NCBI GenBank assembly: GCA_943704425.1
Contig: CALSCP010000386.1
Coordinates: 8,723 to 46,841, forward strand
Direction: 5' to 3'
Origin: Ministeria vibrans ATCC 50519
Taxonomy: Eukaryota; Protista; Filasterea
DNA length: 38,119 bases
Under the pieces are notes generated by a model, which did not search any database, was not told the DNA's origin, and worked only from the letters and a program-made list of their open reading frames with translations. Shown here in pieces: positions 4,056-34,722 of this stretch. Position 1 is the first letter of the stretch. Each line of letters begins with the position of its first letter. The translations under genes were made by a program, and so were the position numbers.

Positions 4056-6680
4056 ATGCCATCCGGGTCCAGGTATGTCACACAGTGATTCTTTTTTATT
4101 TTATTATTTTCCGACTCTGTGTGTGACTCTCTCTCTCTCTCTCTCGTTCAGCCGTTCTGCGTCGCCATCCCGGTCCCGATCGCGCTCGCCTTCACCAAGG
4201 AGATCCCCTCGCTCTCGATCGCCTGCCCCGCGGCACTCTCGCTCGCCGGCTCGCTCACGATCGCGCTCCCCTCGCTCCCACAGACGTTCGCGCTCCCCTT
4301 CGCCACGCCGCCCGCAGTCGCCGCCCGCCCGTGCCGGTCCGCAAAAACGCATTGTACAAGAGTATGCGGCACGTCTTGAGTCGGAACGCGGCCAGCGCAA
4401 GCCACAGACGGATGCTGAGCTACTGCCAAGTGGCGGTGCGTACATTCCGCCGGCGCGTCTGCGTGCCATGCAGGCGGCCATTCAGGACAAGACGAGTGCC
4501 GCCTACCAGCGCATGAGTTGGGACGCCCTGAAGAAGTCGTTGAACGGCCTCATCAATAAGGTGAACGTGGCCAACATCAAAATGATTGTGCCCGAGCTCT
4601 TCTCGGAGAATCTCGTGCGCGGACGTGGCCTTTTTGTGCGCGCCATGCTGCGCGCACAGACTGCATCGCCCACGTTTACACCCGTCTACGCCGCTCTCAT
4701 GTCCATTGTCAACACCAAATTCCCCACTGTCGGCGAACTGCTGCTGCGTCGTCTCATTCTGCAGTTCCGTCGTGCCTACCGTCGCAACCAAAAGGCTGAG
4801 TGTCTCTCGGCCGTGCGCTTCATTGCACACCTTGTCAACCAGCAAGTGGCACACGAGGTACTGGCCTTGCAAATTCTCACGCTGCTCCTGGAAAAACCCA
4901 CGGACGACTCGGTGGAGGTTGCGGTGGGCTTCCTGCGCGAGTGTGGGCTCATGTTGGGCGACGTCTCCCCGCGCGGTCTCGACGCCATTTTTGTGCGTTT
5001 GCGGACCATTCTGCACGAAGGCGAGATTGGCAAGCGCGTCCAGTACATGATCGAAGTGGTCTTTGCAGTGCGCAAGGATGGCTTCAAGGACCACCCGCGC
5101 ATCGGCGAAGGCCTTGATCTCGTCGTGGAGGACGACCAGATCACTCACTTTGTGACGCTCGACGACGAAAACCTCGACGCTGAGGACCGTCTCGATGTCT
5201 TCCGCGTCGACCCTGAATTTGCCCTCAACGAGGACAAGTACGCCAAGATTAAGGCGTCCATTCTGGGCGACGACAGCGACGACGACGATGACGATGACGA
5301 TGACGATGATGAGGAGGAGGAGAGCGATGAAGACGAGAGCGATGAGGAAGATGCCCACAAGGCCAATCAGACCGGAAGTACGTACCCCCTCCATTGGATC
5401 ATGTGCATTTTTTTTACAACCCGCTTTTTTCTTTTTTAGGTGTCGATGTGGTTGATCTGACCGAAGGCGAAATCACTGAGCTGCGACGAAAAATCTACCT
5501 GACAATCATGTCGAGTCTGGACTTTGAGGAGTGCGCACACAAACTGCTGAAGATGACCATCCGACCAGGGCTGGAGATGGAGGTGTGCACAATGCTGCTG
5601 GAGTGTTGTAGCCAGGAGCGCAGCTTTCTCAAGTTTTACGGGCAGCTGGGGCAGCGCTTCTGCGAGCTAGACCGGGTGTACCAGGAGGCCTTTGACCGGG
5701 CCTTCCGCATGCAGTACGACATGGTGCACCGTCTCGAGACCAACAAGCTGCGCAACATTGCACGTTTCTTTGGCCACCTCCTCGCTGCCGATGCGCTTCC
5801 CTGGACCATTCTCGAGCATATTCATCTCAACGAGGACGAAACCACCAGCAGCAGTCGCATCTTTGTCAAGATTCTCGTGCAGGACTTGGCCGAGTCGCTG
5901 GGCCTGGTCAAGCTCAACGAGCGCTTCAACGACGAGTACATGCGTGACTTTTTCTCGGGCCTCTTCCCGCGCGACAACCCCCGTAACACCCGCTTCGCCA
6001 TCAACTTCTTCACGGCTGTCGGTCTCGGTGGCGTCACCGATGCTCTCCGTGCCCATCTCAAGATTGCGTCCAAGCGAGCGCAGCGCGAGGCCGAGGAGCG
6101 CAATATGCGCACTTTGGCTGGTGCAACGGTGCGTCGCGACGAGAGTGATAGTGACAGCGACAGCGACAGCAGTAGCAGTGGGAGCAGCAGTAGCAGTGGT
6201 AGTGGTAGCAGCAGTGACAGTGACAGTGACAGCAGTGACAGTGATGACGACCGTCGTCGACCGTCTCGTCGCGCTCCCTCTCCACCCCACCGTGCTCCCT
6301 CTCCACCTCATCGTGCTCCTTCTCCACCCCGTCGTGCTCCTTCCCCGCCACGTCGTGATCAACGGTCTCGCTCTCCTTCGGCCCATCGTAAATGGTCTCC
6401 CCCTCGTCGGGATCGTGACCGTGACCGCCGTGATCGTTCGCCACCTCCTCGTCATCGTGACCGCGATCGTGATAATCGTGATCGCTCGCCGCCCCCAGCT
6501 CGCCGTCGCAGTCGCACTCCTCCGCCCGTGCGCTCCGGTGAGTCTGGTCTCGACGCCTACCAACGACGTCGTCTTCTCACAATGCAAGCTCGCGGCGAAG
6601 CGCCCAACGACGATGACAGTCGTCGTTCTAGGAGACGGTCGCCCTCTCCTAACGACGACCACAAGCGCTCCCGCCGCTAA
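4056..6680 (+). CDS. CWC22: Pre-mRNA splicing factor CWC22 (MIF4G + MA3/MI domains, RS-rich ends)
   Basis: [93 protein letters not shown]. Introns 4073-4151 and 5378-5439 keep frame. The start at 4056 is the likeliest ATG, but an exon inside the gap cannot be excluded. The C-terminus has 21-nt repeats coding RAPSPP(H/R). Confidence 0.96.
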
Positions 6681-6927
6681 CCTGTACATACATACATTAA
6701 AAGCCAACAAAGAAAAAGAAAAAAAATAATAATTCGAAACTCAGAAATACAATGACTTGGAATTCTTCTGCAATCTGCATCGAATAAATTTGTTTGATAG
6801 TCTGTGTAGAGCTAGCGCGTGGACTGTGGAGAGGCATCCTACCTGTTGGACGCACTCGGTTGTTTTGGGTTATTGAATTTTGTTTTGGGAACGAACAGAC
6901 CAAAAACATCCAAGAAGGAACGAACGA

Positions 6928-7425
6928 ATGGCGGAGGTGTATCCCTGTGGAGTTTGCCAGCGCCCGGTGGGCGACAACGACAAGGCTGTCGGGTGCGATG
7001 GAGAGTGCGACACCTGGTTCCACATTGAATGCGTGCAGCTGTCGCTGACCGCCTACGAGCACCTGATCGCCGAAGAGCAGGTCAACACACAAAACCACTC
7101 CCGTCGCATTCGCCTGTGCTTCCTCCCCTGTGCGTGCGCGTGCTCCCTCTCTCTCTCTCTCTCTGTGTATTTCATTTCCCTGCCTCCCATCAGCCATGCG
7201 GCGTGCGCGACCCCGTCGCCGTTCGTGTTGCTCTCACCGCATAGCGACGAAACGACACTACCAATACTAATAATAATAAGACGAATAATTTAATGCTTGA
7301 ACTTGCTCCCGCTGTAGGCGAGCTGGGTGTGCGACCCGTGCGGTGTCAAGCAGATGGCAAAGATGCTGGCGCAGCAAGCAAATACCCCGGAACGTTCAAA
7401 GAACCCTCAACAGCAAATCCCTTAG
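6928..7425 (+). CDS. Small (86 aa) stand-alone PHD-finger protein, Pygopus-type PHD
   Basis: Exons 6928-7080 and 7318-7425 (phase-0 GT-AG intron) give MAEVYPCGVCQRPVGDNDKAVGCDGECDTWFHIECVQLSLTAYEHLIAEEQ-ASWVCDPCGVKQMAKMLAQQANTPERSKNPQQQIP*. The C4HC3 pattern is complete only after splicing. Confidence 0.88.
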
Positions 7426-7463
7426 TCTAAAGTGTGTACCCTCAATAGCTCATTGAAAGAAAG

Positions 7464-7850
7464 CTCTCTCTCTCTCTCTCTCTCATTCACTCAGTCGCTT
7501 ACTCACTCTCTTTCTCTCTCTTTCGCTTACTCACACTCTCTTTCTCTCTCTTATTCACTCAGTCGCTTACTCACACTCTCTTTCATTCACTCAGTCGCTT
7601 ACTCACACTCTCTTTCATTCACTCAGTCGCTTACTCACTCTCTCTCTTTCTTTCATTCACTCAGTCGCTTACTCACTCACTCACTCTCTCTCTCTTTCAT
7701 TCACTCAATCGCTTACTCACTCTCTTTCTCCCCCTAATATAATGATTATGCAATCTCATAATAATATTAACATTATACTAGTGTCAGTGTGTNNNNNNNN
7801 CACTCTCTCTCTCTTTCATTCACTCAATCGCTTACTCACTCTCTTTCTCC
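7464..7850. repeat. Degenerate minisatellite (core TTCATTCACTCAGTCGCTTACTCAC separated by variable (CT)n)
   Basis: Several near-identical copies of the core visible by eye. The region includes an 8-N gap with a 111-nt duplication across it (7682-7792 = 7801-7911). Confidence 0.85.
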
Positions 7851-7914
7851 CCCTAATATAATGATTATGCAATCTCATAATAATATTAACATTATACTAG
7901 TGTCAGTGTGTATT

Positions 7915-13584: not shown

Positions 13585-16500
13585 ATGCGCAAGGCGATCC
13601 AGAGAAGCGTGTATACGTTTCTCTCGTCAAAGTATGGCGTCACCATCACTGTGATTGGCATTCTACTCGTGATCGTGTCTGCTTTTCAGTTTGGCGAGGT
13701 GCAACATGAACTTGCGATCATAATTATACTAAGGTGCAAAAAAAAAAAAAAAAAAAAAATCGCTCTACAGTCTATAACCTTCGATTGCCTTGTCGTTGAG
13801 CCTTCATCCTTCTCGCACCCTGACCCCCACACCCTTGCTGCTCTCTTTTTTCTCGTGCAGGTGGTCATTGAGTGGAACATTGAGAAATACCATCGAAAGT
13901 TGAACGTGTACACGGACAACATTGCGGCTCGCTCGTTCCAGGAGCGCCTCTGTCTGCCCGTTCCCATCGACATTGTATATACGTGGGTCAACGGTAGCGA
14001 TCCGAAACTCGAACGGTCGCTTGCCGACGTAAAACAGCGTTTGCTGGAGGAAACAGTGTTGGCAGCGGCGGACGACACCGAGTCAACCAGCACTGGCCCT
14101 TCCACAGCGCCATCCGCCCCACCAAATAGTCGTCCGACGCAATTGCCCAACGATGAGACGAGGGATGCTGGCGATGCGGTGGACGTGGCAGCTTCTGCCA
14201 GCGCAGTGGCTGAGGAGGCGTCTCTTGCGGACACTACGACGACTGGAAACGTGTCAGTGTCGCTCCCCATCCCGAGTGCCTGTAATGAGACCATTGAAGC
14301 GTGTCCAACTGCCGCAGTGTTGTCTCCAGACGACAGCTCGACGACGACCAACACGGGAGAGGGCGGCGAGGAGGCTGCCGTTGGGGAGGAGGAGGAGAAA
14401 CTTGAAGAGGTCCCTGATGAGGTGTCCGCGTCACGTTTCCAGGACAACGAAGAGCTGCGCTTCAGTCTGCGATCCATTGAGCGCTTTGCACCCTGGGTTC
14501 GCAACGTCTACATTGTGACCAATGGACAAATTCCTTCGTGGCTCAACCTCGACAACCCCCGTCTTCAAGTGGTGCCGCACAGCGCCATCTTCCCCAACGC
14601 CAGCCATTTGCCAACCTTTAGCAGTCCAGCCATTGAAACGCACCTCCATCGCATTCCGGGTCTCGCCGACAAGTTTCTCTACCTAAACGACGACGTTATG
14701 TTTGGTCGCGAAATATGGCCCGACGACTTCTACACGCACGCCAGCGGGCAAAAGGTACACCACTAATTTTTTTATTGTTGTTTCTTCTTCTTCTTCTTTG
14801 TGTGCGTGTGTGCGTGCGTGTGTGTGTGGTCATGATTTTTTGTCTCGTTTTGGGTGGTTTAGGTGTACCTTGCCTGGCCCGTACCCCAATGCTCAGAAGG
14901 GTGTCCGTCCAACTGGATTGGGGACCGTTACTGCGACCAGGCGTGCAACACGAGCTCGTGTGACTTTGACGGAGGCGATTGCATTGGCAAGGACGGCGCC
15001 ACACAAAGTCGCTACGACTCGTGGTCGACGTCGCAGTGGGGCTCGACAAGTGGTACGGGGGCACAATGTGTCACGGGATGTCCCGACTCTTGGGTGGGCG
15101 ATCGTTACTGCGACCGTGCGTGTAATGTGGCCGACTGTGCTCACGACGCAGGTGATTGTGGCGAGGAGGCGCTCTACCAGGTTTACCACGAAACTCTCAC
15201 TGATGCCAATGTCGTGTATGGGCGCGACGAGAGTGAAAAGGAGACGACTTCCTCGAGCGAGAACGCGGGTGATGCGGACGCGGAGGCTATCCAAAACAAC
15301 GGCACTGCATCCTCTACGTCGCACCTCGACGAGGAGACGGAGGTGGGGAGGGACGAAGCAGCAGCAGTAGAAGGAGATACGGAACCTGTGGTACAGTTTG
15401 AGTTACCGGCCGGCACGAATGCCGCCGTGTTCAATCTCACGGGGATCGTTGGAAGCGAGCACATTGCGGAAGGATCTCACTCAAACCGTGTTGCCGTGCG
15501 CACTGCCATGATTGCCCAACGTTACAAGGCTATGGTCCTCACCTTTTATCCCAATGTGACGCGTCAACCTGTCGATTTGAGCTTTGTCTACTCGGTCAAC
15601 GAGACGGAGCGCGTTCACGTGTCCTTCCGCATTTCCGTTGACACGTTTGTGGAGGCCACGTCGGACTCGGAATCGGCTGAGGCGACGCTTTCTGCTGAGG
15701 CAAGTGGCAGTGCGAATGACACAAGCAACGTAAACGGGACGTTTGCCATGCGCATTGAAAATGGCACTGACACGCTGCACTACGACGATGGTGTGGCGGC
15801 AGGCGAGCTGGCGGCGTTGGTCAACGCGACGACGGTTGCAGACGCGACAGTAGAAGTGCTTACGCGCAATGTGACGCGTGAGCGTCAGATTGAGGCTGAA
15901 GCAGTGGTCGACGACGTGGCGACTCAGCTCGAGTTGGTGGACGTGCCAGAGCACGCCACAGGGCAGCTACTGGAGCTAAAGGAGCAGTTTGTTGCGGGAG
16001 ATTTGAGGCGCAAGGGACTGTACGCAGACACCATGATGCTTTTGGGCAACATTTCGGATCGGGCTTCGTTGAGTATTCCACCCGAGGCGTCCGTCGCACG
16101 TACACTGCTCTCGTTTCCGCTGGACGCGACCATGCTGACCACGGCGAACTTTGTCTATGGTGAGACAGAGGAAGCGACGTTGGCGATGGCGAGTAGCGCT
16201 GAGGAGCGGGAGGATGCAACATTAGTGGCGCAGGATGAGACACTTGTTGAGGCGATGGAGCGCGAGCGTAGCCGTCGTGATGTTGCCGATTGGATTCGCG
16301 ACAGCAAAGAGAAGCAACTGCGCTTCCGCCACGACCTGCGAGCGTCGATTCGTGCGTGGGAAGAGCGCTACGGTGGGCCGTGGGATCCGGCGTTCATGTC
16401 GCAACTGAGTCACGGCGGGGTGTTTCCTTGGGAAAAACTGCCGCACAAGCACCGTCACACACTACTCCGTCGCGACTCGAGTGTGCGAACGGACGAGCCA

Positions 16501-17799
16501 CTGCCCAATCGACATCTACTGGATACCTTTGGTGATTCCCTCAAGTTTGTCAATCGTCTGTACACGCGTGAGTTTGGGGCTGATTCGCGCAAAGTGCCCG
16601 CTCACATCCCTCACATGATTGATCGCCATGTCATGACGGAGCTCCAAGCGCGGTAAGATCACCTTGGCTCCTTACACCGCCATTGCTTACTGACTATGTC
16701 TTTTTTTCTCCACATCTCCGTAGGTTTCCAGTTGAGTTTGACGGGACGTCGTCGCACCAGCTGCGACACAGCGACGACATGCAGTTTGCCTTCTCGTACT
16801 TCTACTATGTGATTGGGGCTCCGTCGGTATTTGACTTTGACAAGGTCTTTAATGAGTTTGACACGAATGGCAGTGGGGTATTGTCAGCCAATGAGATCCG
16901 GTCGCTGGCGGCCGCCATCTATGAGCTGCCTTTGGACGACGCCAAGCTGGGCCGTCTGTCGCGCATTCTGTACAACTGTACGGTGGCGCACCAGCGCGCA
17001 GTGGAGGCGAATCGCACGGGCGAAGGCGCTGGGTTCTTTGCCGGGGGTGGGGGTGGAGGCGAGGAAGCTGATACAGTGGGTGGTCCGCTGTATCATGCTG
17101 TGACGCGCGATGTTGTGCGCTCGTGTGAGCCGGTTATGACAGACCTCCGCAAGCGCAAGACGCGTCGCTATCGCCATCAGATTATGGACGGTGAAGGTCG
17201 CGACGTGGGCTTTAAAATGGTCCGTAACAATGTCACACAGGTGCTCAAGCAACTGGACAATCTACGCAAGGAGCGACCCAAGTTTATCTGTCTCAATGAC
17301 AACATTGACCACCGACTGCCGTCTGCCCTGCACGTACCCACTCACCACCAGTCTTCCCATTTGTGCCCCCATTCATTACTTCTCTCTCCTCTCTCTTTCT
17401 ATTCTTTCTTTCTTTCTTCCCTCATGCGTGTGTAGGTTGTGGGTGCCTTGCGTGAATTTTACGAGGCGCTCTTCCCGACTCCGTCGCAGTTTGAGCTACC
17501 TGAAAACCTCCGCAACCGATTTCTCCACCTTGACGAACTCCAACGCTGGTACACCCTATCATTTCTGTGTTTATTTTGTCACGACCCCAAACAGCACGCT
17601 TACTCCGAAAATGTACGCGCGTAGGAAGCAACAGCAGTTTCGCATGCAGCTCATGCTAGACGTGCTCTTTGTGACTCTCTTGGGGGTGCTTCTGGTGCTC
17701 TGCTTCTCATCGCGTGTCCGGAACTTTTGCCATTTGTGGGCGTTGCGTCGTGCTCGCTCGGTGCGCGAGGCTCGTGGTCGTCGTCTCATGACCGTCTGA
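13585..17799 (+). CDS. GNPTAB: GlcNAc-1-phosphotransferase alpha/beta precursor (Stealth family), multi-exon
   Basis: N-terminal TM then SAFQFGE|VVIEW. Stealth CR1 [13 protein letters not shown]; CR2 [15 protein letters not shown]...PTFSSPAIE...YLNDD; two LNR repeats ([16 protein letters not shown]...CDFDGGDC); DMAP-like [14 protein letters not shown]; CR3 [12 protein letters not shown]; EF-hand [14 protein letters not shown]; CR4 [11 protein letters not shown]; C-terminal TM. Five GT-AG introns. Confidence 0.96.
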
Positions 17800-22810: not shown

Positions 22811-23100
22811 GCTGAAGATCACCACTGCAATCGCAAAGACACCAATGGATCAAGACGATAATATGTGAATTTTGGTGATATTTAATAAAGTTATTTATTA
22901 TGTATTATAATGTGAAAAAACGTATCTCTCAATCGTTTAATTCCTTTGACCTTTCTCTGATCAGTGATCGGATTGACGTTTCTGCACTTCTAAAGTTTCA
23001 AGCCTACCGAAACGCGACGTTATTGAAGTGGGGGGATTTTTTTTTCATTCGACTTTTTTTTATAAGTTTTTTTTTGTCGTTCTCGACTCATTTCATCGAC

Positions 23101-26100
23101 ATGGCATACATGTACGGGCAAGCGGCGGATGATCGAAGGGTGAGTGGGCGTAAGCGAAAGCGCAACACGCGCTTTGAGCCGATGGAGCTCATGGAGGGAA
23201 GCGACAGTGAAGGAGAGGGAAATCCGGCGATGCGAAGCACTGTGATCGGGGGCGAGGATGGTGCAGCGCCTGCAAGCACCCTGGGCGGTGACGGTGGGGA
23301 CGCGGGACGGGCGCGCGCGCGGAGCCGTCCGATGCCGTCGAACCCCGAAGCGACTTTGACGGGTTTTGGCTATCATCAGTCGATCAGCGACACCGACGAA
23401 GAGAGGGTCAAGCAGCTCGCGGCGAGCCTGTCACAGTCAGCAATGGAGGGCGGGGACGACGATCAGATGGGCGCCAGTCTGATGATGCACCCGCAAGCAA
23501 GTGTTAATGTTGCAAGGGCCAACCGAGACGCACAGAGCACCCACAACAGCATGCATGGGAACGGCAACGGCGGTGGCGACGACGACGACGAGTACGGCGA
23601 AGAGGAGGATGAGGAGGATGAGGATGAGGATGAGGAGGAGGACGACGATGACGACGAGGAAGGCGCCGAAGATGAAGATGAGGAGGGCGACCACTCGCTC
23701 AATAGTAGGAGAGGGAAAGGAAGCAAGAGGAGCAGAGGCGTCGACGAGAATGGCATTGATGCGAATGACAACGACGATGGCAATGGCGGTGGTGACGACG
23801 ACGACGCCGACGACGACGACGACGAGAATATTCCAACATTTGTGGTACCGTTGCGTTCACGCGAAGCCTGCGACGCAGTACAGATGTCGCCCATTATGCT
23901 TGACGAGTGGGAGCGACGTGCACTGCTGGTGCTGCTCCCACAGGCACACATTGCACTTGCCTCTACGAGTCCCATTGTCGTGGCCATGCCACCGAGTGCC
24001 GAAAGTGCTACAGCATCAATGATGTCGGCAGCGGCAGCGGCAGCCGCGTCCACCGCAGTCTCGACACCCGAGAGCGCCTCCCATCCGATGGTTGATGTGT
24101 ACTTGCGCGCACGCAACCTCATTCTGCGCGCTTGGTTCCTCAACTGCCACGAAGAGCTCACACTGGACACGTGTCTGGCGACGCTGGTACAAGACAACCC
24201 CGAGATTGTGCCGATAGCCTCGTCGTCGGGAAAGCTAGGGGAGCACAGTGGTCGAGCGTGCCACCGGCTGGGCGTCGTTGACCTGGGCGACGCGGACGTG
24301 TCCGACCTGGTCACGACCGACGCCGCCATGATCCGTCTGGCACATGCTTTGTTGCAGCGTCACGGGCTCATCAACCAAGGCGTTTTTGGCGTACGCAACG
24401 CTGCGTCGCTCGCTTTGCAACGCCAGGCGTTACTTGCATCCGAGACTGCTCCGAAGCATGTGGTGGTCGTGGGCGCGGGCATCGCGGGTTTGGCGGCGGC
24501 ACGAGCACTACGGCAGCATGGCATCCGCGTGACAGTGCTGGAGTCGCGGGATCGCATTGGCGGACGCATCTACACGTACCGCCACCACCAGCACCACGCC
24601 GATTTGGGCGCCACGCTTATCTATGGACTGGGGGGTGGCAGTCCCATGCTGACGCTGTCCAAGCAGCTTGGGGTGCGTTTGTCGCACTTGCGTCCGGACT
24701 GCCCCGTTTTCGACGAACAAGGCAACGATTTGGCGGCCGTGGCGGCGACAACGGCTGCCGCTACGGAGGACGACGAAGACTTTAGCATTTCCAAGATGCT
24801 CGATCTGGTGCACCAGCTGCCGGCCAAGCTGGCGAGTGTCCTTGCCGAGTCGCCGTGCACCTACAGCGCCGAGACACTCAATGCGACCGACCCCTCTGTC
24901 TACGAGAATGTGACTGTTGCGGCCGCCCTGGGCAACGTGGTGGCGGCGCACCTAAGCGGCCAGGGGGTCTGGCCTCTGGCCTCGGCCTGTCGTTTGCACC
25001 CCTTCCTTGTGGAGAGCAGCATTGGTGCGTTGCGTGTTGACGTGACTGCGGCACTGCGATGTCTTTCGGTGGGCGACGCCCTTCGCATGTTGCGTCACAT
25101 TGAGGACGCGCGTCGTCGCGGCCCCCATCTCGCGGCGATGCAGCAGCTGGAAATGGTCTTTCGACAGCACGAACAGGTGATGCAGCAGGTGGACATGGCG
25201 CAACAGGTGCTGCTGCGCCGACAGCAGCTGGAGCAGAAGATGCAGCAGGACCGACTGGCGCAAGTGTCGGAGAATCCTGAAGCGTTGCAGACCTTGCCGC
25301 CGCTACAGCAGCCCGAAGATGGCGTGGCGCACACGACGCACGAGTTGCAGCAGCAAGTGAAGGCGCTCGAGGCACAACATCGCGAGTCGTGGGCCAACGT
25401 GGAGGTACACAAAAAGAAGGTGGCGGACGCCAAGGCGTGTGTCAGCGAGACGGCCGACGGCGGCGTGGGCGCGTGTATGACACAGTTTCGCCTGGCGTCT
25501 ATTGAGGAGTCGCACGCCGGCACGGCTGAGCAGCTGTCGCTGAGCCACTGGCTTTGCAAGGGGCCCCACATCTTTGGGGGCTCCAAGGTGTTGCCGCGCG
25601 CAGGCTTTTCTGCGTACACGACGGGCCTTGCGCTGGCACAGCCGCCCGTCTTACTAGGGCACACAGTGGAGCGCATTGAGTACAGCAGCGGGGCGGGTGT
25701 CAAGGTGCACTACCGAGAAGTGATGGCGAGCAAGACAGATGACAACGTGAGAAAGGAGGACGGAGGCGAAGGGGAAACAGCAGCAGGAGGGGAGGAGAGG
25801 AAAGGGACGGTGACGCAGACGGGAGTGTTGAGTGCCGATGCGGTTCTGGTGACTGTGCCGTTGGGGGTGCTCAAGCAACGACGTGTGGAGTTTGTGCCCG
25901 AGTTGCCGGCGTGGAAGCAAGGGGCCATTGAGTCGGTTGGCTTTGGCTCGAGCACACATGTGGCGCTTTTCTTTGCGACTGCCTTTTGGCGTGGAATCCA
26001 TCAAGATATTTTTGGACACAGTATGGAAGATCCGACGTGTTGCGGGCGGTACTTTCTGTTCTACAATATGCACGCAAGCACGGGAGTGCCGTCGTTGCTG

Positions 26101-26658
26101 GCGGTGATCACAGGCAGTGCGGCGGTGAACATGACGGAAACGGACGACGAAATTATTGCAGGGGCTGTGCGTGTGCTCAATGCGGTGGCGCACTGTGGCG
26201 CTGGTGTGGGTCGTCTGGGTGCCGATCTCATTCGCTCGTCGATCACTGCCCTGCCACCTGTTGAGCCCGTACACGCGACCGTGCACCACTGGCACCGTGA
26301 CGAGCATGCTGCTGGCACTCGCACTTTTGCGTCGGTCGACGCCTCTGACGAACAGTTTGATTTGCTTGCGGCACCCGTCACCGCTGAGATTGCCCACCAG
26401 TCGATGACCCCTGCGTCTGCCAGTGCCCCACCGGACAACCCCAGGGCGGCATCACTGCTTCACCAACACGGCGAGAGCGTCTACACACCCATTCCCGCAA
26501 GCGGTGCCGTTTGCTTTGCCGGCGAGCACACCCACCGCTATCACTACGGCACGGTTGATGGCGCTCTTTTGTCGGCGCGTCGCGAGACCGCCCGTCTTCT
26601 CGACGCCCTTTTGGGTCCTGTGCCTGCCTATGCGCCAACCAATCAAATCATCTCCTGA
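23101..26658 (+). CDS. LSD1/KDM1A-like protein (SWIRM + amine oxidase + Tower), intronless, divergent active site
   Basis: Acidic disordered N-terminus; SWIRM ([25 protein letters not shown]); FAD motif [16 protein letters not shown]...[11 protein letters not shown]; DLGA; Q-rich coiled-coil insert; [26 protein letters not shown]...TVDGALLS. Confidence 0.9.
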
Positions 26659-31419: not shown

Positions 31420-33766
31420 TTACTTTACATCAGTCGACAAGTGAGAGGCAGCAGAAAAGTCGCGTTGGGCAAGGGCAAGCTGGGCGTGAAGGCGAATGAC
31501 CTCCGCCTCCACCTGATCCATCAGCGCACAGTTCTGCTCGTCACTCTCAGTGCCATTGGTCGTGACGGTGGTGGTGGTATCACGGACAACGCTGGCGAGA
31601 CGAATCCGGAGAGCGCGGGTGACATCAGCCATGTTGAGAAGTCTTCGATTGAGCTGCGTGGCCACAGTGGGTGCCTCCTCGCCGGCGCTGCTCGTGAGCA
31701 TGGCAAGTACACGCAGGGGCTCAGCCGACGCGGTCGCCGCTACCGCTGCTGAAGCGCCTGTCGTGCCGCTCGTGCTAGTCACTCCAATGCTCTTGCGGTG
31801 GTTCTGTTCTGCTCTGGCACAAACTATGAAAAAATTGTCATCATAAATAAGTGAGAAGATATTTTCGTACTGGCCGCAAAGCAGTTGGGACAGTTGTAGA
31901 ACGGAGGAGTAGGGGCGCCAGGTGGAATGCCCATGCAGACGGCGTGTTGGTAGCAGTGGCACCGCTCGCACTCGACAAGGTGACCTTCTTCGGCGGTAGA
32001 TACGCACGAGCACCGCACCTGCTCGGTGACCATGCTGCCACGGCCGTGCGAACCCCCACGACGACGCGCACTAGAGCTGTGCGACTTGAAACGACCGCCG
32101 CTCGGTGTTGCTGGTGACGAAGGAGCTGCTGTCGTGCTTGAAGCGGTGGTAGCTGTTGTGGGGATGGTAAGAGGAGTGGAAGGGCCAAGGGTGCTCAGGC
32201 GGGACACGCTCGTGGTGACAGATGGCGCGCCAGCGCTGCTGCTGGTGGTGCGGGTGGCACTGCGTGTGCTCTGCGACGACGACGACGACGGCGACTCTGC
32301 TGTTGCTGTTGCTGTTGCTGGTGCAGGTGCGGGTGCAGGTGCAGGTGCAGGCGCAGGCGCAGGTGCAGGTGCAGGTGCAGGTGCAGGTGCAGGTGTGGGT
32401 GCGTTGATGCTCTTTGCTGCGGCCGACTTGGAGTCGTCCTTGCGGTTGGCGGGTGAGGTGGCAGAGGGTGTCGTTGATGATGCAGAGGGGGTGGCATTCG
32501 TTGACTGAGTGGGCGTGGTTGAGCGTCGTTTCTTGGCGGGTCGTTCCGAGGGCGTCGTGGATGTTGCAGTGGCAGTGGTGGTGGTGGTGGCAGTCGGAGA
32601 AGCGCGTGAAGCAGAGCGCTTGAGGGGACGTGAGCCAGCGGGCATCACTGGAGGAACATAGTCGGCAGGAAGAGCTCGGATGGTCAGCGAGTTGACGGCG
32701 CGTGTGACGCCATCGTCAAAAACAACGAGATAGGTACCGGGACCTGTCACCTTCGTTACAGTGGCGGGGTAGTACCGTCCGTCCTGCCATCGTCCCAGCA
32801 CCCGCTCACCCACTTGCCGATCAGGCTCCTCTTCGGCTCCACTACGCCCTTTCCGCGTCGCGTACGTTCCCGGCGATGTCTCCGAGTTGTGTCGCACACG
32901 AGACGACGACGACGACGACGGCGGCGCCACTGATCCATCTCCTTCGGGTGGGTCCACCTCCATAGAATCGGCATCTTTCCCTTTCGCAGCCCCCGTTGCT
33001 TTATCACTCTTCCGCACAACCAACAGCGGTCGATCATCATCACTATCGCTCTTCCGTCTCTCACTCTCACCCTCCTCTTCATCGTCCACATCCGATTCAG
33101 ACTTATCCTCCTCGCCCCCCCCTTCCTCCTTCTCATTGTCTCCCTTCTTCTGGCTCTTGCGACGCACTTTCTTCTTCTTGCTCTCTCCGTCACCATCGCC
33201 ACCGTCAACTTCACCCACAGCTCGTTTCTTTCCACGACTCACACCACCCGTGTCCTTTGCTGCGGTCCTTCGCCGTGCTCCTGTACTCTTTGCACCGCCC
33301 CGTCCCCGTCCACCGCTTCCTCCTCCTCCTCCTCCTCCACGCGACCCTTTACCCGCACCGCGCCCACTGCCACCACTACGCGAAGTAGTTGTCGTTGTCG
33401 TTGCGGTTGTGCCGCTACTGGTGCGACGCGACAAGCCTGTGCTCGAGCTGCGACTGCCTCGGGTGCTCTTGGTGCTACCGCCACGAGTGCGCGCTCGCCC
33501 GCTCGTGCCTCGTCCTCCGCTCTGTTTACTCTCACTTGCGCTGCCACTGTCATCATCTCGCGCATAGTCCGGATCCTCCTTGGCACTAGCTAAAAGTGCC
33601 GCAGACGACTCTGACGAGTCCGTCACCTCCGATGCGTCCGATGCCGACCCGTCATCGGAGTTCTCCGAGCCACTCACCGATTCTTCCTCTTCACTCTCCT
33701 CGTTGTCGTCATCCTCTCCATCGTCCTCCTCTTGTTCCTTGTCATCATTATCATTATCATTATCAC

Positions 33767-33812
<46 letters not shown>

Positions 33813-34332
33813 GCTTCCTTTCCCATCCCCACTTTCTTTTTCCTCTTCTTTTTTCTCTGCTGCTGCTGCTGCTGCTGCGTCCGCAGCTGCCTTGGCCTTT
33901 TTCAACTTTCGTTCGACTGCCACCTTTTTACGCTCTGCTGCTTTAGCTGCCACCGATGCTGCTGCTGCACCCTTAATTTTGGCTTTGGTACTTTTACCAC
34001 CTGATGGAGAGGTCGTTGCGTTTGTCTTCCTGCTCTTGTTGGCGGGACTTCGACTGTTGGCTCGTTGTGCCCCCTGACCACCGCCGCGTGGCGTCTTTGT
34101 CGTTGCCGAACGTTTGTCCTTCGCCAGTGTCGCGGTGGAGGACTCATCTGTCGTGTCGATGGCGGTGCGTGCTGCGGGACGACGCGACGCACCAGTTCGT
34201 CGCAATCGAGTCGACTCGATACTGATCCATTCGGCAGCGCCTCCAGGAAAGTGAATGAGCACAGCTGAGCCCTTGTGGTCCTTCGAATTGACTTCAATTT
34301 CTCGCACAACGCCGGTCGACCAGTTTCCCGAG
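31420..34332 (-). CDS. PHF20/PHF20L1-like chromatin reader (Tudor/MBT-like + Tudor + PHD), 5' end missing
   Basis: Tudor 1 (NW...VLIHF...EWISIESTRLR), Tudor 2 (VGERVLGRWQDGRYYPATV...GTYLVVFDDG), PHD (VRCSC...LVECERCHCYQHAVCMG...YNCPNC) and a helical last exon. A (GCAGGT)n tract at about 32320-32395 codes a PA repeat. The exon starts at an acceptor beside a (TC)n tract and the first exon was not found. Confidence 0.82.
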
Positions 34333-34334
34333 CT

Positions 34335-34437
<103 letters not shown>

Positions 34438-34722
34438 AGAGACAATATTTAGAGACACGACGTAAGGATACAGTCCTAATGGGCATTTGCAAGAGGGGGC
34501 GCCTCAGAAGAAGAGCCAGGAAGGCAGTTCGGGACCATTCGAAAAACTTCGTGAACTCTCACTTTTTCGCCACGTCGGTTTTTTTTTTCCTTTCGTTCAC
34601 TGTGGCCGAATTTCCACAAAACATGCGTGTGCGTGCCGTGGCGACCCATGGACTGACGGCCCGACTGAAGCTCAGAATGGAGCTGTGCAAATCGCGGAGA
34701 GGGAGAGAGAGAGTGTGTTTAC

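What the first reader, a model, noticed from the sequence alone, without database searches (positions are those of the whole stretch)
6928..7425. Stand-alone Pygopus-type PHD finger in an apparently non-animal genome
Seen: the spliced 86-aa protein is essentially one PHD, VYPCGVCQRPVGDNDKAVGCDGECDTWFHIECVQLSLTAYEHLIAEEQASWVCDPC. Known (recalled): the human PYGO1 PHD reads VYPCGICTNEVNDDQDAILCEASCQKWFHRICTGMTETAYGLLTAEASAVWGCDTC. The two align without gaps, sharing the methyl-H3K4 pocket residues (Y, V, D, W), the CxxxC spacing and the TAYxxLxAExxAxWxCD segment near the BCL9/Legless HD1-binding face. The N-terminal NPF/NHD region of animal Pygopus is absent. Inference: Pygopus is normally treated as a metazoan Wnt-enhanceosome component, so this may be a pre-Wnt proto-Pygopus H3K4me reader with an unknown partner. 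The ORF track shows only the first exon, so it is easy to miss.
Basis: partly seen in the sequence, partly recalled or inferred. Interest (0 to 1): 0.8.

Follow-up and report, generated by a model that had tools for sequence, protein, structure and literature searches.

The report
Tiny Pygopus-like PHD finger in protist
A single-celled relative of animals has a real two-exon gene for an 86-residue protein that is just one PHD finger of the Pygopus type, so this methyl-histone-reading module probably predates animals and Wnt signalling, although its exact kinship to Pygopus is not settled.

Summary
Exon 1 (6928-7080) and exon 2 (7318-7425), joined across a GT-AG intron, restore one complete PHD finger with exactly the Pygopus zinc-ligand spacing.

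- **Similarity to Pygopus.** Among solved structures, exon 1 hits only Pygopus PHDs strongly (E 4e-11 to 4e-9; the next class is at 5e-6). All five residues of the Pygo H3K4me cage are kept. Five of the six BCL9-HD1 contact residues are identical and the sixth is Thr to Ser.
- **Host genome.** It looks like a filasterean-type protist: 29.7 Mb, three integrin-beta genes, and no Wnt, TCF beta-catenin-binding domain or BCL9 HD2 detected.
- **Not unique.** A choanoflagellate transcriptome (Salpingoeca infusionum) holds a 72-residue PHD-only protein of the same type.
- **Kinship open.** Exon 1 scores almost equally against a Pygo profile (66 bits) and a profile of PHDs from animal non-LTR retrotransposons (64.5 bits). 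In a tree it lies just outside a well-supported Pygo clade, but a sister position is not rejected (AU p 0.46).
- **NPF motif.** Its absence is not distinctive, because the cnidarian, placozoan and sponge Pygos seen here lack it too.

Most likely this is a minimal H3K4me2/3 reader near the root of the Pygo PHD lineage. No paper describing such a protein was found. Splicing and expression are inferred, not shown.

The parts
6928..7080 (+). Exon 1: start codon plus the first 47 residues of the PHD finger. It carries zinc ligands 1-6, the Pygo loop (PVGD), the pocket-divider Trp and the start of the loop-2 helix.
   Evidence: Translation. Pfam PHD, model positions 1-37 of 47, E 1e-8. Pygopus PHD structures are the best PDB hits. 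Residues 5-50 align to Pygo profile positions 1-46.
7081..7317 (+). Phase-0 intron of 237 nt, from GTCAAC to CTGTAG, containing a CT microsatellite.
   Evidence: Sequence. In the same-species contig L004 it carries the only differences within the gene: 1 SNP, an 8-nt indel and a 3-nt indel. Read through, it gives no W-x-C-x2-C ending.
7318..7425 (+). Exon 2: the last 8 residues of the PHD (ASWVCDPC, with the signature Trp and zinc ligands 7-8), a 27-residue tail and the TAG stop.
   Evidence: Translation. Residues 1-8 align to Pygo profile positions 48-55. 100% identical in L004.
6681..6927 (+). Short intergenic region and 5' leader between the stop of the CWC22-like gene (6678-6680) and the PHD start codon. 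It contains an AATAAA at about 6785-6790, read here as the likely end of the upstream transcript.
   Evidence: Sequence. The upstream ORF ends at 6680 and carries an MA3 domain. There is no room for an upstream Pygo-type exon on this strand.

Best explanation
This is a genuine, single-copy, two-exon gene of a filasterean-like unicellular holozoan. It encodes an 86-residue protein that is one PHD finger of the Pygopus structural type and nothing else.

Likely mechanism (inferred). It binds the N-terminal tail of histone H3 methylated at K4, probably me2/me3. Binding would use a semi-aromatic cage (Tyr5, Trp30, Asp16 lip, Val14/Ala20 floor) and an A1 anchoring pocket. It still presents the loop-2 helix/beta-5 surface that animal Pygo uses to dock BCL9/Legless HD1, so it most likely works as a small adaptor that bridges H3K4me chromatin to a partner not yet identified.

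Evolution (inferred). It sits at or near the base of the Pygo PHD lineage. A tiny PHD-only protein is also found in a choanoflagellate. This form probably preceded the animal additions: a basic N-terminus, a K-x-IPLVK tail and, in the bilaterian sequences seen here, an NPF motif.

Shown: the sequence, the reading frame, the domain, the spacing and the residue conservation. Inferred: splicing in vivo, expression, histone binding, the partner and orthology.
For: Gene model and domain completion across the junction.

Same-species second assembly, with identical exons and an indel-bearing intron, linked to the same CWC22-like neighbour.

The top nine PDB hits are Pygopus PHDs, with a gap of about 1,000-fold or more in E-value (4.1e-9 against 5.2e-6) to the next PHD class.

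The Pygo spacing C-x2-C-x12-C-x3-C-x4-H-x2-C-x20-C-x2-C was found almost only in Pygo-type hits: 35 domains in 33 of the 150 best hits, all but three of them Pygo-type.

Residue map to Fiedler 2008:
- K4me cage Y341, V350, D352, A356, W366: 5 of 5 identical.
- HD1 contacts M374, T375, A378, L382, A388, W390 read L, S, A, L, A, W in the window. Five match Pygo usage (most Pygos have Leu at 374) and one is Thr to Ser.

Profile scores. Exon 1 scores 66.3 bits on the animal Pygo profile. That is higher than any of the 120 retroelement or other PHDs tested (maximum 60.7) and close to the choanoflagellate protein (71.1).

Choanoflagellate parallel. S. infusionum has a 72-aa complete ORF whose PHD starts at residue 4, the same minimal architecture.

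Non-animal host. No Wnt, CTNNB1_binding or BCL9 HD2 was found, there are three integrin-beta genes, and the genome is 29.7 Mb.

Single copy. The only other exon-1-like PHDs in the genome are an Spp1/CFP1-type gene and one weak match (E 0.006).
Against: - The tree puts the window outside the starred (98/87) Pygo clade, in an unresolved polytomy with retroelement PHDs.
- The Pygo and retroelement profile scores differ by only 1.8 bits for exon 1, and by about 4.5 bits when exon 2 is added.
- Several framework residues (CD..CDTWFHI.C, VQ after ligand 6) are of the retroelement type.
- Leu358, which fills the R2 pocket in Pygo, is Gly here. Thr383 of the T3 channel is Ile. Glu360 is Asp. Histone-tail recognition may therefore differ in detail.
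- The animal Pygo N-terminal basic region and the C-terminal K-x-IPLVK tail are absent.
- No transcript or annotated protein with the spliced sequence was found among proteins of 28-89 aa.
- The donor site GTCAAC is weaker than the GTACGT of the neighbouring gene's intron.
- No BCL9-like partner was detected, although HD1 itself could not be searched.
Confidence: 0.6

Rival explanations
1. It is a PHD finger of the wider Pygo-like/retroelement-like group but is not orthologous to animal Pygopus. It would be an independent small H3-tail reader whose Pygo-like spacing and surface residues are shared ancestral features or convergence, with no HD1-type partner.
For: The window lies outside the supported Pygo clade. 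Profile scores are nearly equal. Identity to the choanoflagellate Pygo-type protein is only 35%. Pfam PHD_Pygo also labels retroelement PHDs, so that label does not discriminate. No BCL9 HD2, TCF or Wnt was found in the genome.
Against: The AU test does not reject Pygo plus window as one clade (p 0.457). A position just outside choanoflagellate plus animals is what the species tree predicts for a filasterean orthologue. All Pygo-specific spacings are kept, as are A378, A388, D352 and D393, which the retroelement PHDs mostly lack. It scores higher on the Pygo profile than any non-Pygo PHD sampled.
Confidence: 0.25
2. It is a domesticated fragment of a non-LTR retrotransposon. The PHD would come from a 2A-PHD-APE-RT element of the kind common in animal genomes, and would now be a host gene or a dead relic.
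For: It shows 53-59% identity over about 40 residues to retroelement PHDs (P0060, P0068, P0106). It scores 64.5 bits on the retroelement profile and shares the CDTWFHI.C motif. P0085 confirms the retroelement context: PHD plus Exo_endo_phos, with an RVT_1 gene next to it.
Against: No such element was found in this genome. Only three exon-1-like PHD matches exist, and the one examined in detail (L002) is an Spp1/CFP1-type host gene. There is no 2A motif, endonuclease or RT nearby. The gene has its own intron and sits between host genes in two independent assemblies. The C-x3-C and x20 spacings are those of Pygo, not of the retroelements. The retroelement profile was built from the hits most similar to this query, which inflates its score.
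Confidence: 0.07
3. The gene model is wrong or the locus is not expressed. It could be an unspliced 121-codon ORF, a pseudogene, or an exon of a larger transcript such as an alternative end of the upstream CWC22-like gene.
For: There is no transcript evidence. The only public protein found is an unspliced read-through ORF called on a metagenome contig (P0001). The donor site is weak.
Against: Only the spliced reading completes the PHD, with the signature Trp and the last Cys pair at exactly the family spacing. The read-through tail changes frame between the two assemblies because of an 8-nt indel. The upstream gene has its own stop, followed by an AATAAA. Both exons are identical between assemblies while the intron varies.
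Confidence: 0.08

Closest known systems
Animal Pygopus PHD finger (human PYGO1/2, Drosophila Pygo; PDB 2vpe, 2xb1, 3zpv; Pfam PF27108 PHD_Pygo)
   Same: Identical zinc-ligand spacing, including the long loop 2. About 45-51% identity over exon 1. The K4me cage Y/V/D/A/W, V and D of the EVND loop, the pocket-divider Trp and the HD1-contact residues L/S/A/L/A/W are kept. The domain ends W-V-C-D-x-C.
   Different: No basic N-terminal region, no NPF and no K-x-IPLVK tail. Gly replaces the R2-filling Leu358, Ile replaces Thr383 and Asp replaces Glu360. HR.CTG is replaced by HIECVQ. It falls outside the supported Pygo clade in the tree. The host genome has no detectable Wnt, TCF beta-catenin-binding domain or BCL9 HD2.
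Salpingoeca infusionum 72-aa PHD-only protein (EukProt EP00049_P017517; P0114)
   Same: A unicellular holozoan and a complete small ORF. The PHD begins 3-4 residues after the start Met. It has the Pygo spacing and Gly at the Leu358 position, with no N-terminal extension and no animal-type tail.
   Different: Only 35% identical to the window's exon 1. It is clearly Pygo-like by profile (71 against 47 bits) and lies inside the Pygo clade, whereas the window protein is intermediate.
Short Pygopus proteins of non-bilaterian animals (Trichoplax 119 aa, Oopsacas 141 aa, cnidarians 157-173 aa)
   Same: Small proteins dominated by the C-terminal PHD, with no NPF motif. The sponge protein shares K-P-V in the loop and Asp at position 360 with the window.
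   Different: They all have an MPR/MPK basic N-terminus and the K-x-IPL-x-K C-terminal tail. The window protein has neither.
PHD fingers of animal non-LTR retrotransposons (2A-like NPGP peptide, PHD, APE endonuclease, RT; for example P0085, P0068, P0083)
   Same: Y/F-P-C-G-x-C start, CD.CDTW[FY]HI.C core and Y..L...W.C..C end. Up to 59% identity. Also labelled PHD_Pygo by Pfam.
   Different: C-x2-C instead of C-x3-C at ligands 3/4, and a loop 2 that is one or two residues shorter. They lack the D352, A378 and A388 equivalents. They are multi-copy and attached to endonuclease/RT, and none was found in this genome.

Membership tests
Pygopus-type PHD finger (domain family) | C4HC3 PHD with an unusually large loop 2 and the spacing C-x2-C-x12-C-x3-C-x4-H-x2-C-x20-C-x2-C | tested here: met
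   The spacing was read from exons 1 and 2 separately. The pattern matched 35 domains among the 150 best hits, all but three of them Pygo-type. The exons align to Pygo profile positions 1-46 (residue 51 at 47) and 48-55 without a gap.
Pygopus-type PHD finger (domain family) | [quoted passage not shown] | tested here: met
   The window reads P-V-G-D. V14 and D16 are kept, while E and N are not. The sponge Pygo also has P-V-N-D.
Pygopus-type PHD finger (domain family) | Semi-aromatic H3K4me cage: Y341, W366, D352 walls and V350, A356 floor | tested here: met
   All five are identical by ungapped alignment. Binding itself was not tested.
Pygopus-type PHD finger (domain family) | HD1 (BCL9/Legless)-binding residues M374, T375, A378, L382, A388, W390 | tested here: inconclusive
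   The sequence has L, S, A, L, A, W. T375A abolishes binding in Pygo, and the effect of Ser is unknown. No HD1 sequence was available to search, and BCL9 HD2 (PF11502) gave no hit, with an uninformative control.
Pygopus-type PHD finger (domain family) | Groups with Pygo PHDs in a phylogeny, or is discriminated from other PHDs by profile score | tested here: inconclusive
   It lies outside the 98/87 Pygo clade, but the AU test for inclusion gives p 0.457. Scores are 66.3 bits on the Pygo profile and 64.5 on the retroelement profile. Among PDB chains, Pygo is clearly the best match.
Pygopus protein (Wnt enhanceosome component) | N-terminal homology domain with an NLS and the NPF motif that binds ChiLS | tested here: not met
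   The PHD starts at residue 5, there is no NPF anywhere, and the upstream gene ends 247 nt before the ATG. NPF is also absent from the cnidarian, placozoan and sponge Pygos seen here, but those keep a basic N-terminus.
Pygopus protein (Wnt enhanceosome component) | Conserved C-terminal K-x-IPLVK tail after the PHD (seen here in all the animal sequences aligned) | tested here: not met
   The window tail is GVKQMAKMLAQQ..., against the animal tails.
Pygopus protein (Wnt enhanceosome component) | Genome encodes the pathway partners: Wnt, TCF with a beta-catenin-binding domain, BCL9, ChiLS | tested here: not met
   No Wnt, CTNNB1_binding, BCL9 HD2 or SSDP was found. There is a weak LIM_bind hit (29 bits) and a Groucho Q domain. 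Searches were exon by exon on a 2,860-contig assembly, so absence is not proven.
Non-LTR retrotransposon PHD (2A-PHD-APE-RT) | PHD preceded by a 2A-like NPGP motif and followed by an APE endonuclease and reverse transcriptase; multi-copy | tested here: not met
   There is no NPGP, endonuclease or RT at the locus. The gene is single-copy in the genome. The spacing differs.

The most novel reading that the evidence does not exclude
The 86-residue protein, together with the 72-residue choanoflagellate one, represents the pre-animal state of Pygopus: a free-standing H3K4me reader that already carried the HD1-type docking surface. On this reading it had a chromatin partner before Wnt, TCF/beta-catenin and BCL9 existed. 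Because it is intermediate in sequence, it would also mark the host-gene lineage from which animal non-LTR retrotransposons captured their PHD finger.
Probability: 0.3. Interest if true: 0.75.

Novelty: new variant of a known kind. Interest (0 to 1): 0.55.

Why it matters
Pygopus is described in the papers read here only as an animal Wnt co-factor, conserved down to placozoans, sponges and ctenophores. A PHD-only protein with the Pygo histone cage and the Pygo partner-docking face, found in unicellular relatives of animals that show no Wnt, no TCF beta-catenin-binding domain and no BCL9 HD2, would mean the chromatin-reading module of the Wnt enhanceosome was recruited from an older job. It also offers a very small, easily expressed protein on which that older job can be tested directly, through histone-peptide binding and partner pull-down. 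Separately, its intermediate sequence links Pygo PHDs to the PHDs of animal non-LTR retrotransposons, a relation I did not find discussed.

Tried and rejected
- **Word-index search with exon 1** (targets of 28-89 aa): found nothing. No annotated or transcript-derived 86-aa product is therefore on record, and this gave no evidence on splicing.
- **Profile word search with a 10-sequence alignment**: returned only Pygo-type proteins. Every named one was an animal, so it added no further protist member. Ten unnamed or EukProt hits turned out to be jellyfish, copepod, shrimp and soft-coral sequences or stayed unidentified.
- **Naming the organism.** An exact look-up of a window protein was blank because the genome's own records are withheld. 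An LSD1-like neighbour gave only 26-35% identity, and all the named hits were animal KDM1A. The BioSample number of the metagenome that holds the same species is in no paper. The placement as filasterean-like rests on gene content and on earlier scan notes.
- **Pfam's PHD_Pygo label as a membership test:** rejected, because it also labels a retrotransposon ORF.
- **BCL9 via PF11502:** no hit, but the control was uninformative and HD1 has no model in the library used.
- **Contaminating animal DNA:** rejected. The gene is linked to the same CWC22-like neighbour in two independent assemblies, and the genome lacks Wnt and TCF.
- **A second Pygo-like paralogue:** the 51%-identical hit on contig C2042 is an Spp1/CFP1-type PHD protein.
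- This ruled out structure prediction of the complete finger.

Full report
**What is there**

On the + strand an ATG at 6928 opens a 51-codon exon, MAEVYPCG...AEEQ. It ends at a GT (7081). An AG at 7316-7317 is followed in frame by ASWVCDPC, 27 more residues and a TAG at 7423-7425. Pfam's general PHD model matches exon 1 only over positions 1-37 of 47 (E 1e-8), so exon 1 lacks the last zinc-ligand pair, and exon 2 supplies it.

I built a profile from 105 animal Pygo PHDs. Exon 1 residues 5-50 align to its positions 1-46, with residue 51 falling at 47. Exon 2 residues 1-8 align to positions 48-55. The splice therefore restores the domain with no gap.

If the intron is read through, the product has no Trp-x-Cys-x2-Cys ending. 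A public metagenome contig of the same species (L004, ENA ERZ23497376) carries the same CWC22-like gene end and the same PHD gene. Both exons are identical there, and the intron differs by one SNP, an 8-nt indel and a 3-nt indel.

The upstream gene is CWC22-like, with MIF4G and MA3 domains. It stops at 6680 and is followed by an AATAAA. That leaves no room for an upstream NPF exon on this strand.

No search, look-up or structure prediction of the 86-residue product was made.

**How Pygo-like is it**

Against all PDB chains, exon 1's nine best hits are fly Pygo, human PYGO1 and PYGO2 (E 3.7e-11 to 4.1e-9, ungapped). The next class, KDM5A PHD3, is at 5e-6.

I used the residue numbering of Fiedler et al. 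2008 (PMC2726290):
- **K4me2 cage.** Y341, V350, D352, A356 and W366 are all identical in the window (Y5, V14, D16, A20, W30).
- **HD1 contacts.** M374, T375, A378, L382, A388 and W390 read L, S, A, L, A, W.
- **Differences.** E360 becomes D. I357 becomes V. L358 becomes G; this Leu fills the R2 cavity in classical Pygo (PMC3851687). T383 of the T3 channel becomes I.

The ligand spacing C-x2-C-x12-C-x3-C-x4-H-x2-C-x20-C-x2-C was found in 35 domains among the 150 best library hits. All but three of these are Pygo-type.

**The complication**

A search of 1.84 billion representative proteins gave 1,046 hits. Besides animal Pygos, many of the best are PHDs preceded by a 2A-like D-x-E-x-NPGP motif. 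One of these (P0085) continues into an APE endonuclease and is followed by a reverse-transcriptase gene, so it is a non-LTR retrotransposon. Pfam's PHD_Pygo (PF27108) is recorded on it as well. The PHD_Pygo label on the window's own read-through ORF (P0001) therefore does not discriminate.

These retroelement PHDs reach 53-59% identity to exon 1, against about 50% for Pygos. Scores over the exon-1-equivalent part were:

| Sequence set | Pygo profile (bits) | Retroelement profile (bits) |
|---|---|---|
| Window exon 1 | 66.3 | 64.5 |
| Animal Pygos | 76-106 | 46-59 |
| Retroelement PHDs | 20-56 | 53-75 |
| Other PHDs | at most 60.7 | 24-71 |

The window sequence is thus more Pygo-like than any non-Pygo PHD sampled, and more retroelement-like than any Pygo. 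It is truly intermediate. One caveat applies: the retroelement set was chosen by similarity to this very query, which flatters that profile.

In a maximum-likelihood tree of 88 domains, the 16 Pygo representatives form a supported clade (98/87). These include a sponge, Trichoplax and a choanoflagellate. The window lies outside this clade in a polytomy. Forcing it into the clade costs 1.4 log-likelihood units (AU p 0.457). A position just outside choanoflagellates plus animals is what the species tree predicts for a filasterean orthologue. The data do not show this, however.

**Which organism**

The assembly has 29.7 Mb in 2,860 contigs. Six-frame family searches gave these results:

| Family | Result |
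|---|---|
| Wnt | no hit |
| TCF CTNNB1_binding | no hit |
| BCL9 HD2 | no hit |
| SSDP | no hit |
| Integrin beta | three strong genes |
| Groucho/TLE Q domain | strong hit |
| LIM_bind | weak hit |

Integrin beta together with the absence of Wnt fits a filasterean-like holozoan rather than an animal or a choanoflagellate. That reading uses established knowledge: integrins are present in Capsaspora and lost in choanoflagellates. Earlier notes of this scan reached the same view independently; I checked only the integrin point. The window's LSD1-like protein has no close relative in the protein collection. Its hits are 26-35% identical, and all the named ones are animal KDM1A. The species could not be named.

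**It is not alone**

Hit P0114 is a 72-residue complete ORF from the EukProt transcriptome of the choanoflagellate Salpingoeca infusionum. Its PHD starts at residue 4 (the window's starts at residue 5). It has the Pygo spacing and also has Gly at the Leu358 position. It scores clearly as Pygo, 71 against 47 bits.

The non-bilaterian animal Pygos are short: Trichoplax 119 aa, Oopsacas 141 aa, corals and jellyfish 157-173 aa. They have no NPF motif. They all have an MPR/MPK basic N-terminus and a K-x-IPLVK tail, both of which the two protist proteins lack. NPF appears only in bilaterian sequences in this sample.

The real difference is that the protist proteins are the bare finger.

**Most likely function**

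With all five cage residues and the A1-pocket residues (L382, E385, A388 equivalents) conserved, the best-supported reading is a reader of the H3 tail methylated at K4. As in Pygo, the Asp lip may favour me2. Gly at the Leu358 position may reopen an R2 pocket, as in classical PHDs.

A protein of 86 residues can do little alone. The conserved rear face suggests that it recruits, or is recruited by, a partner through a beta-strand/helix motif of the HD1 kind. None of this was tested here.

**Literature**

Searches for Pygopus together with choanoflagellate, holozoa or unicellular found no paper describing a non-animal Pygo-type PHD. The papers read treat Pygo as an animal Wnt component conserved to placozoans, sponges and ctenophores. 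The library does not cover subscription journals.

**Verdict**

This is a real-looking minimal PHD gene of the Pygo structural type in a non-animal holozoan. It is probably an H3K4me reader near the root of the Pygo lineage. Orthology, splicing, expression and partner all remain open.

Noticed in passing
P0085 / L005:6001-8624; also P0002, P0005, P0068, P0083 and others: A large family of PHD fingers sits behind a 2A-like D-x-E-x-NPGP peptide and in front of an APE endonuclease and an RT gene, the layout of non-LTR retrotransposons. Some proteins carry 2-3 tandem PHDs (P0004 shows 14 matched stretches). They are about as similar to this gene as Pygo is, and the one whose Pfam record was looked up (P0085) is labelled PF27108 PHD_Pygo. 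A Pygo-retroelement PHD relationship was not found in the papers searched.
   Followed up: partly
G000:C2306:33473-33826 (-), locus L011: A strong match to the Groucho/TLE N-terminal Q domain (PF03920, 99.7 bits, open frame of 507 aa) in this unicellular genome. Pygo's known job in flies is to relieve Groucho repression.
   Followed up: no
window 7460-7900: CT-rich tandem repeats (units such as ttcattcactcagtcgcttactcac) lie downstream of the PHD gene. The roughly 85 nt before the 8-N gap (7794-7801) are repeated right after it, which looks like a scaffolding duplication. The independent contig L004 ends with one copy.
   Followed up: partly
window 6130-6680 vs L004: The CWC22-like gene's C-terminal Arg/Ser/Pro-rich tail (repeats of H/R-R-A-P-S-P-P) differs between the two assemblies by one 21-nt repeat unit and three SNPs. 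This is natural copy-number variation in a low-complexity tail.
   Followed up: no
window 14863-16653 (+), 22900-26655 (+), 31824-34442 (-): Neighbouring long ORFs encode, in order: a protein with Notch-type LNR modules; an LSD1-like SWIRM plus amine-oxidase protein with a roughly 400-residue N-terminal extension (26-35% identical to its hits, the named ones animal KDM1A); and a Tudor plus PHD_5 protein. Several chromatin genes therefore lie within 30 kb. The linkage is probably coincidental.
   Followed up: no
G000:C2042:5497-5613 (+), locus L002:1498-2808: An Spp1/CFP1-type PHD protein (436 aa ORF), the only other PHD in the genome with notable similarity to exon 1 (51%). A long microsatellite-like tandem repeat lies just upstream of it.
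   Followed up: partly
P0065 (ENA ERZ23498370, 805-bp contig): A 96-aa ORF with Pygo spacing but a divergent sequence, lacking the animal N-terminus and tail. Its metagenome accession number is close to that of the sample holding the window's species. It may be another protist member, but no DNA could be fetched.
   Followed up: partly
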